Positions 14,301-56,421 of a stretch of 64,000 bases of DNA are shown piece after piece. Location of the stretch: contig NC_079165.1 in assembly GCF_947568905.1 (NCBI RefSeq), positions 101,122,001 to 101,186,000 on the forward strand. The letters are read 5' to 3'. The position numbers were made by a program, and so were the translations under genes. This DNA is from Ostrea edulis. Lineage: Eukaryota. Position 1 is the first letter of the stretch. Every line of letters starts with the position of its first letter. The notes under the pieces are model-generated. The model had not been told where the DNA came from. It worked only from the letters and a program-made list of their open reading frames with translations, and ran no database searches.

Positions 14301-17300
14301 CACAACCCTAGCTTTGTAGAACCCTAAAAATGGATGTAGACAAAAAACCATGAAAATAGCAAGGTTTGAATTTAAATCTGTACATACACACTTGATAATA
14401 ATCAATTTGATGTTTTTTTTATTTTCTAGATGACTGGAGTGGTAATGAATGCACAGAAAAGACTCCAGTTAAATGTGTACATACGGAATGTGTCTCATAT
14501 CAGGTACAAAATGACATTCTACAAAGCTATAGTACAAAATGACATTCTACAAATCTATCATACAAAATAACAGTCTACAAAGCTATAGTACAGACTAACA
14601 TTCTACAAACCTATAGTACAAAATGACATTCTACAAAGTTATGGCACAAAATGACAGTCTACAAAGCTATAGTACAAAATAACAGTCTACAAAGCTATGA
14701 TAACAAATAACAGTCTACAAAGCTATAGTACAAAATGACAGTCTACAAAGCTATAGTACAGACTAACATTCTACAAACCTATAGTACAAAATGACATTCT
14801 ACAAAGTTATGGCACAAAATGACAGTCTACAAAGCTATAGTACAAAATAACAGTCTACAAAGCTATGATAACAAATAACAGTCTACAAAGCTATAGTACA
14901 AAATAACAGTCTACAAAGCTATGATAACAAATAACAGTCTACAAAGCTATAGTACAAAATGACAGTCTACAAAGCTATGATAACAAATAACAGTCTACAA
15001 AGCTATAGTACAAAATAACAGTCTACAAATCTATAGTACAAAATGACAGTCTACAAAGCTCTAGTACAAAATAACATTCTACAAAGCTATAGTACAAAAT
15101 AACAGTCTACAAAGCTATAGTACAAAATGACAGTCTACAAACCTATAGTACAGAATAACATTCTACAAAGCTATAGTACAAAATAACAGTCTACAAAGCT
15201 CTAGTACAAAATAACATTCTACAAAGCTATAGTACAAAATAACAGTCTACAAAGCTATAGTACAAAATGACAGTCTACAAAGCTATGATAACAAATAACA
15301 GTCTCTGCAAAGCTATGGTACAAAGTCATATTTTATCAATTTTATTTTGAAACATTGAATTTTGTATGTGAAATGGGAGACAACTGTCAGTTAAATAAAA
15401 ATTCATATTGACCATTTCTTAATCATGTATTGAGATCATACATATATTTTAGAATGCAACAATGGCCACTTCTGTAAATCATAATTATTTTTCAAAATTT
15501 TATTTTGACTACTCATGCAATTATATGTTTGTATATAATATGGGTGTTCCATATGGTAGTACAATAACATTTAAGATTTCTTTACTGCTGCTTTTAGAGA
15601 CACAGCTAATATTGATCACATCTACTATCCAGTTCTGTGGCTGAATGAGGTAATCTTAAACACATTTTTCAACTTTCATGATTGCACATGGCATCTCAGA
15701 TTAACATGGTTTACTTACTAGGAGCTTGTTGTAATTAATTTGACTGTCCGCCCAACTGAGATATATTTTACTTGCTGTAAAATCTGAGTGGATAAATTTA
15801 TTATTTATGCCCCCCTTCAAAGAAGAGGGGCATATTGGTTTGCACCTGTCAGTCGGTCGGTAGACCACATGTTGTCCACTCAATATCTTGAGAACCATTC
15901 ACTTGATGATAATGATATTTCATATGAGGGTTGGTTATGAGTAGAAGAGGACCCCTATTGTTTTTCAGGTCAAAAGGTCAAGGGTCAATTTACTCTAGAC
16001 ATAGAAATATAATGTCCACTCAATATCTTGAGAACCCTTTGTTTGATAGACATTAAACTTGATACACTGATACATCTTCAAGAGAAGATGACCCTTATTG
16101 ATTTTGAGGTCACATGGTCAAAGGTTAAACTGGACATAGGAATATACTGTCCATTTGATATCTTGAGAACCCTTTGCTTGACAGACATCAAACTTGGTAC
16201 ACTGGTATATCTTCAGGAGAAGATGACCCCTATTGATTTTGAGGTCACATAGTCAAAGGTCAGTGGTTGAACTGGGCATAGTAGTATATTGTCTCCTATA
16301 TTTTAAAGAATTATTTACTTGATAGACACCAAACTTGGTACACTGGTACAGCATAAGGAGTAGATGACCCCTATTGATTTTTAGGTCACATTGTCAATCC
16401 ACTCTTGACATAGGAAGATATTGTTTGCTCAATATTTTGAATTGATGATGCTACTATCAATTAAATGATGTGTGTGTATAACCCTTTTCAATTTTGCACC
16501 ATGGGGGAGGGGGGGGGGGGGTCATATGTGTTTTACAAACATCTCTTGTTTATTAGTCATTCAACATTTCACATGTATGTTTTTTATCCAAACTGATCAA
16601 CAATGAGAATTTGAAACCAGTGAGGGATGCAATAGGGGTACTGTTTCATAATGCAGTAGGTCACATGGGTCACTCAGGTGACCTGTTGCTGCCAGTTCTC
16701 ATCTGCTGTTGAACAATTTTGACTTCTCAGAAACTACATAGCCAATTTCACCAAAATCTTTTGGGGTATGGAAACACAAATTTTGAAGGTCATTGTCTCA
16801 GCCCTTTTGGAACCTTTGGAGTAGGATTTGAAACCTCTGAATATAGGATAATCAATAAAAAGTCTTCTTTACTAATCACACCAGGTGCATAGTCATATTG
16901 ATCGTGGAAACTTCTACCAAAAATGTGAAATTCATGGTCCCTGGTAGCAGTAGCTCAGTGGTAGAGTATTCGCTTTGTAACAGGGAGGTTGTGAGTTCAA
17001 TCCTTGCTTGTGTCATGGCCACATCAAACCTAAGATGTAAATATAGGTAGTGATTGCTTATTTACCAAATAGTTTACATGTATGTTATATGGAAAGAGAA
17101 GTAACTCTTGTAATGGATACTTTATCTCCCCCTAAGGGAGCTCTTCATATTGTTTATCTCCCCCTAAGGGAGCTCTTCATATTGGAAGTTAGACAGAGTG
17201 TTTCAAGTGATACTGAATAAAGCATGGTCTAACAATGGTAGCAGAGTCTGGTTGAAAGGAAATTAGTGTATCATAGTGTCAAAAACAGTGTAAGGAAGTG

Positions 17301-20300
17301 TGACATTTAAGAACTATTCAGTAAGAATTCAGTGAATGTGAAAAAGTGCAAAACTTCGTGGACTAAGAAAATAAGAATGTCAACAAAAATCAACCCCCCC
17401 TCTTATGACCCCAAAGTGAAAACTTATGAATTGTACAAGCAAGAATTGTTAGCATGGAAAGAGGTCACAGAGTTAGATAAGAAGAAACAGGGAGTTGCTA
17501 TAGCCTTGTCCCTTCCTGAAAATGATGAGTCCAGGATACGAGAAAAAGTGTTTGATCAGCTGAACTTGGAGGATCTTAAGGAAGAAACAGGTTTGAATAC
17601 CTTGATTGAATTTTTGGACAAACATTTAGCGAAAGATGACTTAGCAGATAGCTTAGAGAAATTTGAAGATTTTGAAGACTTTAAAAGGTCTGATGGACAG
17701 TCTATTAATGAATACATATCCATTTTTGATGCCAAATACAGAAAAATCGAAAAGAAAAACATGAAGTTACCCTCTGAGATTTTAGCCTTCAAGTTACTCA
17801 GAAGATCACTGATAAGCAAAGAGGAAAGAATGATTGTATTAACTGGAATGAATTTTGAGAATAAAGAAACTCTTTATGAAGAAGCTAAGAAATCCCTGAA
17901 AAAATTCAAAGGTGAAACTTGTGGAAACGCACCCACTACATCAGTATCCATTAAACTTGAACCGGCATTCCTGGCAGAGAATGAGGAAGCACTGATGGCA
18001 GCTGGATATGCGAGAATGCCAATGAAGGGTAACAAATTTAACAGAGGAGCTGGAAGAAATGAGCAGACGCGAGGGAGAGGATTTCATAGTGGCCAGAGTA
18101 GAGGTTCATACCGTCAGCAAGGTGGGCAATCGCGTATAGGCAGTTCAGGCATTAAAAAGAGCATGAATCCATCTGGACCAGATGGAAATGTAATGACATG
18201 CAAATCTTGTGGGTCATTTAGACATATGATGGCAGCTTGTCCTCACAGTTGGGAAAACATGGCGAAAGTAAACACATGTTCAGCTGAAGAAGAAGAATTT
18301 GTGCTGTTTACAGGAAACCAACCAAAAGAGATAAGGCACTTGGGAATGGATGCCAGGAACTGTGCAGTTCTAGACAGTGCCTGCAGCAGTACAGTGTGTG
18401 GAAGTACATGGATCAACACATACATCGATTTGCTTGATGAACTAGACAAGAATAGGATTAAGAAAATGGAGGGCAGAAGAATCTTCAAGTTTGGAGGGGG
18501 AACTCATCTTAAATCTGAGGGAGAATATGCAATTCCAGCTCGTATAGCCGGGAAAGATGTTACGATAACAACTGATGTTGTTAATTCAGACATTCCATTA
18601 CTGTTGTCAAGAACAGCTATGAAAACTGCTGGCGTGAAGCTGAACTTAGAAGATGACACAGCAGAGATCCTAGGAAAAACAATGAACCTTAATTTGACCT
18701 CTTCTGGACATTATTGTGTTCCCATAGATAAGGCAGAAATGATACCAGTTGAGGAAGTTTGTTCAGTCAGGATCGATGAGATAGACCCTAAGAAAAGGTA
18801 TTTAACTCTTCTAAAACTGCACCGACAATTTGCCCACCCACCAAAGAAACGACTGGTATCACTTTTGAAGGATGCAGGAGCTTGGCGAGACAACTTCGGC
18901 CAGGATATTGAAAATATTGAGCAGAAGTGTGATGTATGCAAGACCTATGCTAGAACACCATCACGGCCTGTTGTTTCATTTCCAATGGCATCCCACTTTA
19001 ATGAAAAGGTGGCTATGGACCTGAAGTACTGGAGAGGAAAGTGGATTTTGCACATGATTGACATGTGGTCCAGATATACAGTGTCTGTTTTTATCCAGAG
19101 GAAAAAGGCAACTGATGTCATCGATAAAATCATGTCTCATTGGATAGGAATATTTGGTGTCATGACAGATAATGGAGGGGAGTTCAACTCGGAAAAAACT
19201 CGAGAAGTGGCATCCATTTTGAATGTAAAGGTGCATACATTTGCAGGTGAAAGTCCATTTCAAAATGGATTGTGTGAAAGAGTGCACTCTGTAACTGACA
19301 TGATGTTGACAAAACTAGAGCATGACTACAGGGATGTGAGTGAGCAGAGTCTGTTATGCTGGGCAAACATGGCAAGGAATGTATTGCAGATGTGGAATGG
19401 TTTTAGTAGTCACCAGCTTGTGTTTGGGTGGAATCCCAACCTCCCCAACATCATGACAGACAAATTGCCAGCACTTGAGGGTTGTACATTGAGCGAGACA
19501 TTTGCTAAACACCTTAATTTGTTGCACAGCACCAAACGAGCTTATATAGAGGCAGAAGCTGATGAAAGAATTAGGCGAGCATTGTTGAACAAAGTGAGAG
19601 CAGCTGAACAATTTTATGAAAATGGAGATATGGTATACTACAAACGTGAGGGCAGAGATAGATGGCTTGGACCAGGTAAAGTTGTGTTTCAAGATGGCAA
19701 GGTTGTTTTTATACGTCATGGTGGAGTTTTTCTCCGAGTGTCGCCCAATAGACTACAAAAACTATCAGAAAATTGTATACAAACAGAAGAGAAAGTTACA
19801 GATTCTGAAAATATTGAGAAGACACAACAACCAAGAAAAGCAAAGAGTGCAGTCTCTGAATACCTGATGGAAAGCAAAATAAATCACAGTCCAGTTTCAC
19901 TAATTCAAAGCAATATTGCACTGAAAGCACATGACAGCATTCAATACAAGATGGGTTCAGAAGATGATAACTGGATAAAAGCTACAATTCTTGGCAGAGC
20001 AGGTAAAGCAACAGGAAATAACAGAAATTGGTATAATGTGCAAGATTTTGAGAGCAAAGAAGAAAAAAGCATAGACCTGGGCAGACTCTCTTGGGAAAGA
20101 ATCAACCAAAATGATGAAAGTGTGCATTCTACAACATATGAAAATACAAGTTGTGACAATATAGCCCTAGCGAAACAAAATGAACTAGAAAAACTCAAAA
20201 CCTTTGACACGTACACTGAAGTTGAAGATGAAGGGCAGAATAGATTATCAACAAGATGGGTCATCACTTCAAAGGAAGGACAAGTAAGAGCAAGACTTGT

Positions 20301-23300
20301 TGCACGTGGATTTGAGGAAGAATTTTGTATCCCTAGAGACAGTCCTACAGTCGGAAAAGGTGGTCTGAAGATATTTTTGACAATAACAGCAAGTAAATTA
20401 TGGGATGTCAAAACCACAGACATAAAATCAGCCTTCTTGCAAGGAAAAACACTTGACAGAGATGTTTATCTTCAACCTCCAAAGGAAAGCATCACACCTG
20501 CTGGAACAATATGGAAGCTGAAACACTGCTTATATGGACTAAAAGATGGTGCAAGACAGTTTTATTTGAGCGTCAAAGAAGAACTTGATAAACTTGGTTT
20601 TGAGCATGCAGTGTGGACCCAGCTCTATTCTGTTATAGAAAAGACAGGAAGCTTCATGGGATTATCTGCTCTCATGTTGATGATTTTCTCCATGCTGGGG
20701 ATGAAGTTTTTGAGAGACAGATTTGCAAGTTTCGAGAGAGATTTTCTGCAGGAAAAGTAGCTGAATGCAAATTTCAGTACATTGGCTTCTATGTAAAGCA
20801 AGATCAAGAGGGGATAGTATTGGATCACACCAATTACATGGAAAAATTACAAAGTTTAGAGATTGACCCTCAGAGAGCAATTCAGAGGAAATGTCAGCTG
20901 AGTGGTGAAGAACAGACAGCATACAGACATATTATAGGACAGATCAACTGGGCAGTGCAGGGATCAAGACCAGACCTTGCATTCGAAATGATAGACATGA
21001 GTACTAAGCTGAGAACTGCAACTGTAGCAGATTTAACCAGAGCAGCAAAAACCATTAACAGGCTTAAAGACTTCAAAAGTGTTTTGAAATTCCCAACATT
21101 AGACCTCACCTCGTTGAAGATTATGACGTTTACTGGTGCATCTCTAGGAAATCTTATGCCTCGTTCACACGAAGAATTTAATTCGCATTAAATGTAAGTT
21201 AATGCGAATTAAATCTGAATCGCGTTCACACGGAGATTTTAATGCGCATTAGTTTACTTCGAATTAAAATTGACGTCGCGATTTAATGCGAATTAAATTT
21301 ACTTCGCATTAGCTCCGTGTGAACGCTAAGCGAAGCTAATTCGAATTAAATGTAGACGCATGCGTAATGGCAAATTTGGGTCACATGCATCATACCCATG
21401 GTCAGCTTTATATATTAATGTTAGTTTTGTACGAAAAACGAAGCAAAATGATAATAATCACTAAAAACATGTACAAACAGCATGTCATTAGATAATGTCA
21501 GACGTAAATCTGTGCTCTGCATAGGCATACTGAGTAATACATGTGGAAGGAATTGTTTTTAAATACGACAACAATGTTTTAAAACAGTGATATGATTTTC
21601 TTTTTTACATTTTTTAAAACATATGCCGCTCATTGTTAATTTTTATACCATATGACGTCATAGTAGACTTATAATACGTATTAGTAATTAAAAATTACGT
21701 CATAACGGTAGTCAGCGGAATGGTGAAAAAGACGTTCCGAAGTTTTAAAATTGGGCCCATGAAGAAACAATATATTGTCTAGATTGAATGCTGGTTGTCG
21801 GAGGAAATAACAAGTAATTTCTTGGGAACATATAAATAAACCCGACAAAAAACTCCTTATGTGTAGATCAGAATTATGTATGCAGGCCTAAATTGTAAAC
21901 ATGTAGTATACTACATGTAGGCCTATATAGCGTTTTGAACAAAGAATTCTGTATAGATCTACACAATATTCATTAAAATATCTATAAAAATAATTTTCAA
22001 TAACATAGTCTATTCTTTAATTTATTTCGCGCACCCTTTAATAGAGATGCATACGAATTTAATGCGCATTAGTTTACTTCGCATTAAATATTACCGCCGT
22101 GTGAACGCTATTTAATTCGAATTAATTTAATGCGCATTATTTTACTTCGCATCAAATTTGATGCGAAGTAAAATTTAATGCGCATCCGTGTGAACGAGGC
22201 ATTAATGAAGGAGTAGGAAGTACCCAAGGAGTCATAATCTGGATTATGGACAAACAAGGAAAATGCTGCCCCCTTTTCTGGCAGGCTAAAAAGATACGAA
22301 GAGTCGTCCGCTCCACTCTAGCTGCAGAGGCGCTTAGCCTACAGGAAGGACTGGAGGCAAGTTTTTACTATCGACACATGTTGGAGGAAATTTTAGGACT
22401 CCACAGAAAATCCATCGATATTTATGCATTTGTGGACAATAAAAGTGTCATAGATTCTGTGCATTCTACTAAACTTGTGGAAGACAAGAGACTTCGAATT
22501 GATATTGCAGCTTTGGCAGAATCAGTCGTGCAAGGGGAAGTACGGAAAATTCAGTGGTGCTCTGGACAAAAACAGTTGGCAAACTGCTTAACAAAGGCAG
22601 GGGCAGATGGTTTGTGTGTCTTGGAGATTCTACAAAGAGGACAAATGTTGTCGGACTTTGTACTTTAAAGTGACAATGTTACTGTTAATTCTAAAACTAG
22701 ACAAACTTTAATTCTGAACTTTTATTTCATTTTGGTTAGGTTCAAATAAGCCTTAAGAAAAGGAAAGTATAATTAATGTTAGTTTACATGTATGTTATAT
22801 GGAAAGAGAAGTAACTCTTATAATGGATACTTTATCTCCCCCTAAGGGAGCTCTTCATATTGTTTATCTCCCCCTAAGGGAGCTCTTCATATTGGAAGTT
22901 AGACAGAGTGTTTCAAGTGATACTGAATAAAGCATGGTCTAAGGTCTGTCAGATATGATCTTAAAAATGGAGGTCATGTGTCGCGGCAGGCATTGCCACG
23001 TTAAAGAACCCTCACTGCTATAGCCATTAGTGCTAGGCATAGGTCTAAATTTGTGGTACTTACCTACAGCTGGAGACGTCTCAATATGAATGAAAAATTC
23101 ACGATAGGCTATAAAACAAATAAACCAACAACCCTAGGTCAAAGGTTAAGGTTCTGGGACAGGGCAACATGGATCGTACCATAGTTATACTGAGCATAGT
23201 AGTCTCTACGAAAAGTAGGAAATTCTTGGACCATGGGGTGAGGAATTCCCATTCCAGGGTAGGACTATAAGGATCATACAGTGAAAATAAGAATCTTCTG

Positions 23301-54600: not shown

Positions 54601-56421
54601 TGTAAACTGGGGTTAGTCTGGTGAAAACAGAAAACGAAAGAATTTTACAATATATAAAAAGTATGCCATTCAATTGTAGATGATAATATGTAGTTCCTAT
54701 AATATCTTATCAACATAAACGATCAGTGAAGTGGAATGATCAATTTTAAATTTTGAACATATCAAAGCAAACAACATTATTACCTCCAAAATCGATGGAA
54801 GTAGAAGAGAAACCAGTTGATCCGCCCCTTGGTTTTGCTCATTTGTTTTAGTAACAAGTATGAAGTCAACAAACCACTGAAAATAGACATAATTTATATA
54901 AAATTTCTCTGAGAAAATAAATATCAGTATTTTTACAATGCTAAAAACTATGGAGCATCAAATCAACAAAAACTGAAATACTTGAAGATATTTTTTAAAA
55001 GTTTTTAAAGATATCATGGACTAATTTGATGACTGCAACAATTGATTTAAATATTTCTTCAAAAAATTAATGGTATCTTCAAATCTAAATTATTGTACAT
55101 ATAAATTAAAATGTTGATAGCAGATTATGGTGAATTGAATTATTGTTCTTTTCAAATGAATTGATGATATCAACAATTGAATTGATGCGTGCTATAATTC
55201 AATTGAAGAGAGCAATTATTCAATTAATGCATTTATTGAATTGATGAAAACAATAATTAATTTGATGTGCGCATCAATTCAATTATTACCTACAATAATT
55301 AATTGATGCATGAAAGGTGAAGATAACGAACAGTGATTAATCTTATAACTCCTACAAGCGATACAAAATAGATAATTGGGCACACCAGAGGTGGGGTTAG
55401 GTGCCTAGGAGGAGTAAGCATCCCCTGTCGACAGGTCACACCCGCCGTGAGCCCTATATCTTGATCACATAAACGGAGTTATCCGTAGTTAAAATCAGTG
55501 TACATGCATCAAATCAATAACTCCACTTAATAATTCAATAGATGCGCGAATAAATTCAGTTCAATTATTACCCGCAATAAGTAATTGATGCATGCATCAA
55601 ATCATTGATTGCGCACATTAATTCAATAAATGTGCGTATCAATTAAATTGATGAGAGTAATTATTGATTTGATGCGCACACCAATTGAATTATTGCGTGC
55701 AATGATTGAATTAATGATACCTTCAAATAATTAATGATATCTTCAATTATTTGCGTTTATGTTAATTTAGCTCTCGATATAAAGCCGGTGACTGTGGCTC
55801 AGGGATAATTAAAGCGATTGCTTCGTGATTGGGAGGTTGTAGGGTCATGGTCATGGTCGTATAAAATCTAAAACGTAAAATTAGATATAGTAACTGCTTC
55901 TTTGCCAAATGCTTGGTATTTTGAGCTGAGATTCGCGGGTTTTTTGGACGATATATTAAAACCGAGGTTCCATGTCGCTACAGGCGTTGGTACCTTAAAG
56001 AACCATCATTGCTACGCCTCCGAGCGTCGTGCACACATTTAGATTTAAATCCGTTGTACTTCACTTACAGCTGGTGACATCTAAATGTGAGTAAAAAGAA
56101 CAGAGAGCAAACAAGTAAACGATGCTAAAACATTACCTGAGAACGAAGAATGTATCAACGGCAACCAAGGCATTGAAAATGGCCTGGGACGAGACACGAC
56201 CGAGAAATTCTGCGTAATATGTCAGAAAATTGGCTGCAATTAGAATTATAAGTTATTCAGTATGTTTAATTATATGCATCAGACAATACCATACCTTACA
56301 CTGAAGTATCTCCACAAATCATCTATCACACTAGTCGCTTACCATGGACATAAGATTGGTGTTAAAGATGGGATATCAATATATTTTGAATTAATCCATC
56401 CTTTAATTTGCAATGAAAATG

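What the first reader, a model, noticed from the sequence alone, without database searches (positions are those of the whole stretch)
16945..23130. Copia element with both att ends clipped, no TSD and a target-site deletion: likely integrase-independent capture
Seen: the internal LTR boundaries are canonical (the 3' LTR starts TGTTAG at 22777; the 5' LTR ends CTAACA at 17234 before the PBS). The outer ends are not: the 5' LTR lacks TGT and the 3' LTR lacks CA. The flanks (CCAAA and GGTCT) are not a duplication. The element interrupts a SINE, and comparison with the intact copy shows about 27 bp (equivalent to 55911-55937) missing at the junction. There is a 1-nt overlap on the left and a GGTCT echo on the right. 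Established: integrase-mediated insertion keeps TG...CA and makes a 4-6 bp TSD, and Ty1 cDNA can be captured at double-strand breaks by end joining. Inference: a full-length cDNA patched a break in the SINE.
Basis: partly seen in the sequence, partly recalled or inferred. Interest (0 to 1): 0.72.

Follow-up and report, generated by a model that had tools for sequence, protein, structure and literature searches.

The report
Copia cDNA end-joined into broken SINE
A young copia-type retrotransposon in an oyster genome sits inside a SINE with both tips trimmed, no target duplication and 28 bp of the SINE missing, whereas ten sister copies are canonical, so it looks like a rare natural case of a retrotransposon DNA copy being pasted into a chromosome break by the cell's repair machinery instead of by integrase.

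Summary
The element runs from 17070 to 22942. Its LTRs share 163 nt, with one mismatch. Its inner LTR boundaries are canonical: CTAACA before the PBS, and TGTTAG after the polypurine tract. Its outer ends lack TGT on the left and CA on the right.

- **Sister copies.** All 26 other LTR copies of the family in this genome have TGTTAG...CTAACA. All 10 copies whose two flanks could be compared (8 full elements, 2 solo LTRs) have a perfect 5-bp duplication.
- **The SINE.** In an alignment with 26 intact copies, the two flanks are halves of one SINE. Exactly the 28 bp between ...CCAAA and GGTCT... is absent; 24 of 26 copies have 28 bp there. There are no filler bases and at most 1 nt of microhomology.

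The third test could not be done. The empty allele and read-level junctions remain unchecked.

Best reading (about 0.65): a complete linear cDNA was nibbled and blunt-joined into a double-strand break. The copy later acquired a 1-kb nested DNA transposon. This is a new natural member of a mechanism known from experiments.

The parts
16942..17069 (+). Left half of the host tRNA-derived SINE (tRNA-like head at 16944-17015). It ends ...TTTACCAAA at the junction.
   Evidence: It is 82% identical to the consensus of 26 copies. The last bases, CCAAA, match the SINE consensus, so there is no filler.
17070..17234 (+). 5' LTR, clipped. It starts TAG and lacks the family's first three bases, TGT. Its inner end, CTAACA, is canonical.
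17237..17247 (+). Primer binding site TGGTAGCAGAG. By my own knowledge it is complementary to the 3' end of animal initiator tRNA-Met.
   Evidence: The same motif follows the 5' LTR in all sister copies.
17332..20760 (+). Long gag-pol reading frame (1142 aa). The integrase core lies at aa 557-636 and the first half of the copia-type RT at aa 961-1093.
20613..21153 (+). Second pol piece, in another frame. It holds the remainder of the RT domain (weak match to RVT_2 profile positions 161-226). The pol frame is broken here.
21154..22204 (.). Nested non-autonomous DNA transposon at 21157-22201, with 16-nt perfect terminal inverted repeats and a TTA/TTA 3-bp duplication. It is very high copy and specific to this Copia copy.
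   Evidence: (joint 21153->22202 in 4 of 4 runs; depth 50-100 times higher).
22755..22767 (+). Polypurine tract AAGAAAAGGAAAG, upstream of the 3' LTR.
   Evidence: It is conserved in sister copies.
22777..22942 (+). 3' LTR, clipped. It starts with the canonical TGTTAG, ends GGTCTAA and lacks the terminal CA.
22943..23115 (+). Right half of the same SINE. It starts GGTCTGTCAGATATGA, at the consensus position 28 bp beyond the end of the left half.
   Evidence: It is 88% identical to the consensus.

Best explanation
A completed, double-stranded, full-length linear cDNA of a recently active Ty1/copia element was joined into a chromosomal double-strand break inside a tRNA-derived SINE by the host's non-homologous end joining, not by integrase.

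Before ligation the cDNA lost its last few bases at each end: at least TGT on the left and CA on the right, plus any extra terminal bases. The broken chromosome lost 28 bp. Both joints are blunt, with no filler and 0-1 nt of microhomology, which fits classical Ku/ligase IV-type joining better than microhomology-mediated joining.

Shown: the clipped ends, the missing duplication, the 28-bp gap relative to the SINE family, and the canonical behaviour of the sister copies. Inferred: that a break existed, that the substrate was cDNA, which repair pathway acted, and that the 28 bp was lost in the same event. A PIF/Harbinger-like element later inserted into the RNase H region of this copy.
For: - **Sister copies are canonical.** Ends of 26 other LTR copies in the same genome all read TGTTAG...CTAACA. 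Ten of 10 copies with both flanks available carry perfect 5-bp duplications: AGCAC, TGTGC, ATTTC, GTAAA, ACCCA, AGTAT, GTTAG, TATCC, GTGTG and AATAG. The family's integrase therefore works normally, and this copy is the exception.
- **The clipped positions are SINE bases, not mutated LTR bases.** AAA on the left and GG on the right match the SINE consensus. The two LTRs differ at only 1 of 163 positions, so point mutation cannot explain the ends.
- **The target lost 28 bp at the junction.** The two flanks align to one SINE with exactly the 28-bp consensus segment CGCTCGGCATTTAGAAGTGAGAATCACG absent between them. Of 26 intact copies, 24 have 28 bp there (range 27-32).
- **The substrate ended at the LTR tips.** Both joints lie within 2-3 nt of the true cDNA termini. 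This is expected for a linear cDNA and not for copying from a chromosomal template.
- **Precedent exists.** Ty1 cDNA of 140 bp to 5.6 kb is captured at HO breaks in a Ku-dependent, RAD52-independent way (PMC1976456, read). Pol4-dependent end joining inserts Ty1 cDNA at breaks (PMC11372161). Retroviruses and LTR elements retain residual integrase-independent insertion (PMC11042837).
Against: - The pre-insertion (empty) allele was not recovered. That the 28 bp was lost in the same event is inferred from paralogous SINE copies, and a few copies carry their own small deletions in this segment (L041, L044 and L084).
- No read-level confirmation of either junction was obtained. The lay-out of contigs from four other oysters returned only paralogs and other SINE copies.
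- This is a single locus, so the pathway (classical versus alternative end joining) cannot be established.
- GGTCT occurs both 2 nt inside the LTR end and at the start of the right flank. This is unexplained and may hint at a more complex joining step.
Confidence: 0.65

Rival explanations
1. Normal integrase-mediated insertion into the 28-bp segment of the SINE, followed later by two separate small deletions. Each would have removed an LTR tip together with the adjacent SINE bases and one copy of the duplication.
For: Small deletions are common in old repeats, and some SINE copies have deletions in this very segment.
Against: It needs two independent deletions that each start 2-3 nt inside an LTR, in an insertion young enough that its LTRs differ at 1 of 163 positions. 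None of the 26 other LTR copies shows terminal erosion.
Confidence: 0.08
2. An assembly or polishing artefact at the two repeat boundaries. The real locus would have canonical ends and a duplication, or no insertion at all.
For: The junctions lie between two repeat families. None of the four other individuals examined showed contigs carrying this copy's private LTR variants (for example position 17194). No read support could be obtained.
Against: The structure is internally coherent: both flanks are halves of one SINE copy in the same orientation, and both unique flanks occur once in the assembly. Polishing errors do not typically remove 28 + 3 + 2 bases exactly at element boundaries. Absence from four other oysters is expected for a young polymorphic insertion, and contigs drop rare variants.
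Confidence: 0.08
3. Integrase-independent insertion by Rad52-type single-strand annealing. Single-stranded PBS or PPT tails of the cDNA would pair with homologous chromosomal sequence, as described for Tf1 (PMC11042837).
For: This pathway is the best characterised integrase-independent route. This SINE copy carries a 9-nt identity to the PBS core, TGGTAGCAG at 16942-16950.
Against: In that pathway the downstream flank resembles the start of the PBS, the upstream flank resembles the end of the PPT, and the LTR ends are kept or extended. Here the downstream flank (GGTCTGTCAG) has no similarity to AATGGTAGCAG. The upstream flank shares only AA with the PPT tail. Both LTR tips are shortened. The 9-nt PBS-like word lies 119 bp to the left of the left junction, on the wrong side. 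There is no pre-existing element and no tandem structure.
Confidence: 0.05
4. DNA-level origin. The segment would have been copied from a chromosomal Copia copy during break repair or replication template switching, or the locus would be a product of recombination between two elements.
For: Elements that lack a TSD are usually explained by recombination between elements.
Against: Recombination between elements keeps the LTR tips and gives unrelated flanks; here the tips are lost and the flanks are one SINE. Templated copying has no reason to begin and end within 3 nt of the two cDNA termini.
Confidence: 0.04

Closest known systems
Capture of Ty1 cDNA at HO-induced double-strand breaks in S. 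cerevisiae (Moore & Haber 1996; Teng, Kim & Gabriel 1996; Yu & Gabriel, as summarised in PMC1976456; PMC11372161)
   Same: Retrotransposon cDNA is used as filler at a chromosomal break by Ku/Pol4-dependent end joining. There is no target duplication, small losses occur at the ends, and microhomology is 0 to a few nt. Inserts of up to 5.6 kb were seen.
   Different: Those events are experimental and somatic, occur at an induced break in yeast, and mostly involve fragments, with the 3' LTR as a hotspot. Here a complete two-LTR element sits in the germ-line genome of a bivalve at a spontaneous break, and it was found by sequence alone.
Residual integration of integrase-defective retroviruses (HIV-1, MLV), as reviewed in PMC11042837
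   Same: A full-length linear viral DNA enters the chromosome without integrase.
   Different: That is a cell-culture phenomenon, and the published re-analysis emphasises PBS homology at the insertion site, which is absent here.
Rad52/SSA integrase-independent pathway of Tf1 (PMC11042837)
   Same: Integrase-independent insertion of LTR-retrotransposon cDNA, shown to act in nature.
   Different: It requires PBS/PPT homology at the flanks or a pre-existing element (tandem formation). Neither is present here, and the ends are trimmed rather than extended.
NUMT-mediated break repair in primate evolution (PMC2567098; title and abstract seen, not read further) and endonuclease-independent L1 insertion (from my own knowledge)
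   Same: These are natural, evolutionary-scale cases of extrachromosomal or retroelement DNA patching a break. By my own recollection, such insertions lack a target duplication and are often accompanied by target deletion.
   Different: The inserted molecules differ: mitochondrial DNA fragments and non-LTR elements, not an LTR-retrotransposon cDNA.

Membership tests
Ty1/copia LTR retrotransposon | Integrase domain lies upstream of the reverse transcriptase in pol, and the RT is of the RVT_2 (copia) type. | tested here: met
   rve at aa 557-636 (E 7e-6, below Pfam's own cut-off) and RVT_2 at aa 961-1093 (E 2e-16); the rest of RVT_2 lies in the next frame.
Ty1/copia LTR retrotransposon | LTRs end TG...CA with short inverted termini and are flanked by a 5-bp target duplication. 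| tested here: met
   Met for the family: 26 of 26 other LTR copies read TGTTAG...CTAACA, and 10 of 10 testable copies have 5-bp TSDs. Not met by the outer ends of this copy, which is the finding.
Ty1/copia LTR retrotransposon | PBS next to the 5' LTR is complementary to initiator tRNA-Met, and a polypurine tract lies before the 3' LTR. | tested here: inconclusive
   TGGTAGCAGAG lies 2 nt after the LTR, and AAGAAAAGGAAAG lies before the 3' LTR. The match to tRNA-iMet rests on my own knowledge of the tRNA sequence and was not checked with a tool.
Integrase-independent end-joining capture of cDNA at a break | No target-site duplication. | tested here: met
   The flanks are CCAAA and GGTCT. Both are consecutive parts of one SINE.
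Integrase-independent end-joining capture of cDNA at a break | The terminal CA (and the TG on the other strand) that integrase joins is lost at both ends. | tested here: met
   TGT is absent at 17070 and CA is absent after 22942. The bases in their place match the SINE consensus.
Integrase-independent end-joining capture of cDNA at a break | Target bases are lost at the joint, judged here against the SINE family. | tested here: met
   28 bp is absent relative to 26 intact SINE copies, 24 of which have exactly 28 bp there.
Integrase-independent end-joining capture of cDNA at a break | The pre-insertion allele carries the lost bases and no element. | tested here: inconclusive
   One search returned paralogous contigs only. 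Searches found no alternative haplotype in the assembly. Searches were blank.
Integrase-independent end-joining capture of cDNA at a break | Dependence on Ku/ligase IV and independence from integrase. | not testable with these tools
   This needs genetics or a reporter assay.
Rad52/SSA integrase-independent pathway (Tf1 type) | The downstream flank matches the start of the PBS, the upstream flank matches the end of the PPT, or the insertion lies beside a pre-existing element sharing an LTR. | tested here: not met
   Junction sequences were compared with the criteria read. There are only two LTRs and no tandem.
Inter-element recombination product | Intact LTR termini with unrelated left and right flanks. 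| tested here: not met
   The termini are clipped, and the flanks are two halves of one SINE copy.

The most novel reading that the evidence does not exclude
This is a heritable, naturally occurring insertion of a complete LTR-retrotransposon cDNA by break repair in a metazoan germ line. If so, end-joining capture is a real, if rare, second route of LTR-element insertion in animals. Such events could then be counted genome-wide from their signature: tips clipped by a few bases, no duplication, and a target deletion. I found no report of such a natural case in the open literature I could search.
Probability: 0.55. Interest if true: 0.55.

Novelty: new member of a known kind. Interest (0 to 1): 0.45.

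Why it matters
Integrase-independent insertion of LTR elements and retroviruses is known almost entirely from yeast genetics and from cell culture with crippled integrase. A clean natural example has several uses.
- It comes with an internal control: ten sister copies that integrated canonically.
- It shows that the route operates in an animal germ line.
- It provides a sequence signature that can be searched for in long-read assemblies and population data.
- That search could measure how often retroelement cDNA patches chromosome breaks, and whether the rate rises under stress or in particular lineages.

Annotation pipelines that demand TG...CA ends and a TSD would also mis-delimit or discard such copies.

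Tried and rejected
- **Read lay-out.** It gave only paralogous Copia and SINE contigs. No contig bridged either junction and no joint skipped the whole element. This is inconclusive for both the junctions and the empty allele, and is not evidence against them. It did reveal the nested transposon.
- **Alternative haplotype in the assembly.** The unique parts of both flanks occur once.
- **Exact-word scans of metagenome contigs.** Scans for the left SINE half and for the flank/SINE boundary were both blank.
- **PBS/PPT homology at the junctions (Tf1 model).** Rejected; see the rivals.
- **The 'GGTCT echo'.** If the two GGTCT had annealed, only one would remain. Both are kept, so it was not used for joining. 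It is probably coincidence, or an unresolved templated step.
- **The 9-nt PBS-like word in the SINE head.** It is specific to this SINE copy (0 of 26 others) but lies on the wrong side and 119 bp away. It arises from the SINE consensus by three changes, two of them CpG transitions, and I treat it as chance.
- **No consensus or repaired version of the element was built.** Only 12-nt termini and flanks of the sister copies were compared.
Full report
**What is there**

The window is part of a chromosome-scale contig of an 895-Mb genome. The public runs that hold the flank are labelled as one oyster species or 'oyster metagenome'.

Between 17070 and 22942 lies an LTR retrotransposon.
- The repeat finder gives one pair of direct repeats, 17070-17232 and 22780-22942, 163 nt at 99% identity.
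- The long reading frame 17332-20760 has an integrase core at aa 557-636, upstream of a copia-type reverse transcriptase at aa 961-1093 (RVT_2, E 2e-16). The rest of the RT lies in a second frame. This is the Ty1/copia domain order.
- The inner LTR boundaries are canonical. CTAACA at 17229-17234 is followed by A and the primer binding site TGGTAGCAGAG. A polypurine run at 22755-22767 precedes TGTTAG at 22777.
- The outer boundaries are not canonical. The 5' LTR begins TAG, and the 3' LTR ends GGTCTAA.

**Is this how the family normally ends?**

No. A search of the same genome with the LTR returned 45 matches. I printed 12 nt of each end plus flanks for the 27 best. The 26 that are not the window's own clipped ends all begin TGTTAG and end with CA.

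Wherever both flanks of one insertion were available, the five bases before TG and after CA are identical. This holds for eight full elements and two solo LTRs. The duplications are AGCAC, TGTGC, ATTTC, GTAAA, ACCCA, AGTAT, GTTAG, TATCC and GTGTG, and AATAG. The family's integrase therefore makes standard 5-bp duplications, and the window copy is the only exception found.

Sister copies are 98-99.6% identical to this one in the internal region sampled, so the family was active recently.

**What happened to the target?**

ARAGORN sees a tRNA-like head at 16944-17015. The left and right flanks each hit thousands of places in the genome at 82-88% identity, so the host is a tRNA-derived SINE.

In sampled copies the sequence runs ...CCAAA, then about 28 bp, then GGTCTTTCGGATATGA.... 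I aligned 26 intact copies and added the two window halves as fragments.
- The left half ends at the column before the 28-bp consensus segment, and the right half starts at the column after it.
- 24 of the 26 copies have exactly 28 bp there (range 27-32).
- The bases that replace the missing TGT and CA are the SINE's own (AAA of CCAAA; GG of GGTCT).
- There is no filler.
- Microhomology is nil on the right. On the left it is at most 1 nt, and only if this copy had T where the consensus has C, as 5 of 26 copies do.

Point mutation cannot account for the ends, because the two LTRs differ at one position in 163.

**Mechanism**

Integrase joins the 3' OH of the conserved CA at each end to staggered target positions. 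An integrase product therefore keeps TG...CA and is flanked by a duplication. Here neither CA is present, there is no duplication, and target bases are missing. The two joints nevertheless lie within 2-3 nt of the true cDNA termini.

That combination points to a finished linear cDNA whose ends were nibbled and ligated to the two ends of a chromosomal break that had itself lost 28 bp. This is the known behaviour of Ty1 cDNA at HO breaks:
- inserts of 140 bp to 5.6 kb, Ku-dependent and RAD52-independent (PMC1976456);
- Pol4-dependent capture (PMC11372161).

It also parallels the residual insertion of integrase-defective retroviruses (PMC11042837). The blunt, filler-free joints fit classical end joining better than microhomology-mediated joining. 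That last step is inference from one locus.

**Rivals**

1. *Tf1-type annealing pathway.* This is the best-studied integrase-independent pathway. It uses single-stranded PBS/PPT tails, leaves flanks that resemble the PBS start and the PPT end, or makes tandems at pre-existing elements. None of this is seen here. The flanks do not match, the tips are shortened rather than extended, and there are only two LTRs. A 9-nt word identical to the PBS core lies in the head of this SINE copy and in none of 26 others. It lies 119 bp to the left of the left junction and cannot be a junction homology.
2. *Recombination between two elements.* This would keep the tips and give unrelated flanks; it is rejected.
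3. *Copying from a chromosomal donor.* This would not begin and end at the LTR tips.
4. *A canonical insertion followed by two flanking deletions.* This is possible but needs two coincident events in a young copy.
5. *Assembly error.* This could not be excluded directly.

**What could not be done**

- The single read lay-out (contigs of four individuals from four studies) was swamped by paralogs. It showed no contig bridging either junction and none carrying this copy's private LTR variants.
- This is what a young polymorphic insertion and variant-dropping contigs would give, so it decides nothing.
- The assembly holds no second haplotype of the flanks.
- Two exact-word scans of metagenome contigs were blank.

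The empty allele and read-level support therefore remain the decisive missing pieces.

**State of the copy**

The copy is complete from LTR to LTR but not intact.
- The pol frame is broken between the two halves of the RT domain.
- A 1045-bp non-autonomous DNA transposon sits at 21157-22201. It has 16-nt perfect terminal inverted repeats and a TTA/TTA duplication.
- All eleven sister loci that cover that site lack the nested element.
- Contigs of all four runs join 21153 directly to 22202.
- The nested element therefore most likely arrived after the capture, or in an unsampled donor.

**Verdict**

It is a new natural member of a mechanism known from experiments. It is of moderate interest, and would rise if reads and an empty allele confirm it.

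Noticed in passing
window 21154-22204: A 1045-bp non-autonomous DNA transposon is nested in the RNase H region of the Copia copy. It has 16-nt perfect terminal inverted repeats (ATGCCTCGTTCACACG and its complement), many subterminal repeats and a TTA/TTA 3-bp duplication, which is PIF/Harbinger-like. Contig depth is 50-100 times that of the Copia body in four oysters. It is absent from all 11 sister Copia loci that cover the site.
   Followed up: partly
window 16942-16950 versus 17237-17245: The head of this SINE copy reads TGGTAGCAG, identical to the core of the Copia primer binding site. None of 26 other SINE copies has it (consensus CGGTCGCGG). It lies 119 bp left of the junction, and two of the three changes from the consensus are CpG transitions, so it is probably chance.
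   Followed up: partly
window 22936-22947: GGTCT occurs twice, 7 nt apart, across the right junction: once in the LTR end (GGTCTAA) and once as the first bases of the SINE right half. It was not used as annealing microhomology, because both copies remain. It is either coincidence or a trace of a templated step.
   Followed up: partly
window 17122-17185 and 22832-22895: Each LTR contains a head-to-tail duplication of a unit of about 32 nt (TTTATCTCCCCCTAAGGGAGCTCTTCATATTG). Several genomic LTR hits split at about position 86 of the LTR, suggesting variants with a different number of units.
   Followed up: no
G000 contig 5, 66073938-66076238 (loci L002, L003, L005): A sister Copia copy with a canonical GTGTG duplication contains an inverted partial copy (LTR plus PBS in the opposite orientation) just inside its 5' LTR. 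This is a complex internal rearrangement.
   Followed up: no
window 16200-16552: The first ~350 bp of the left-flank query is another abundant dispersed repeat, with more than 40 copies at 90-93% identity and internal tandem sub-repeats of about 140 bp.
   Followed up: no
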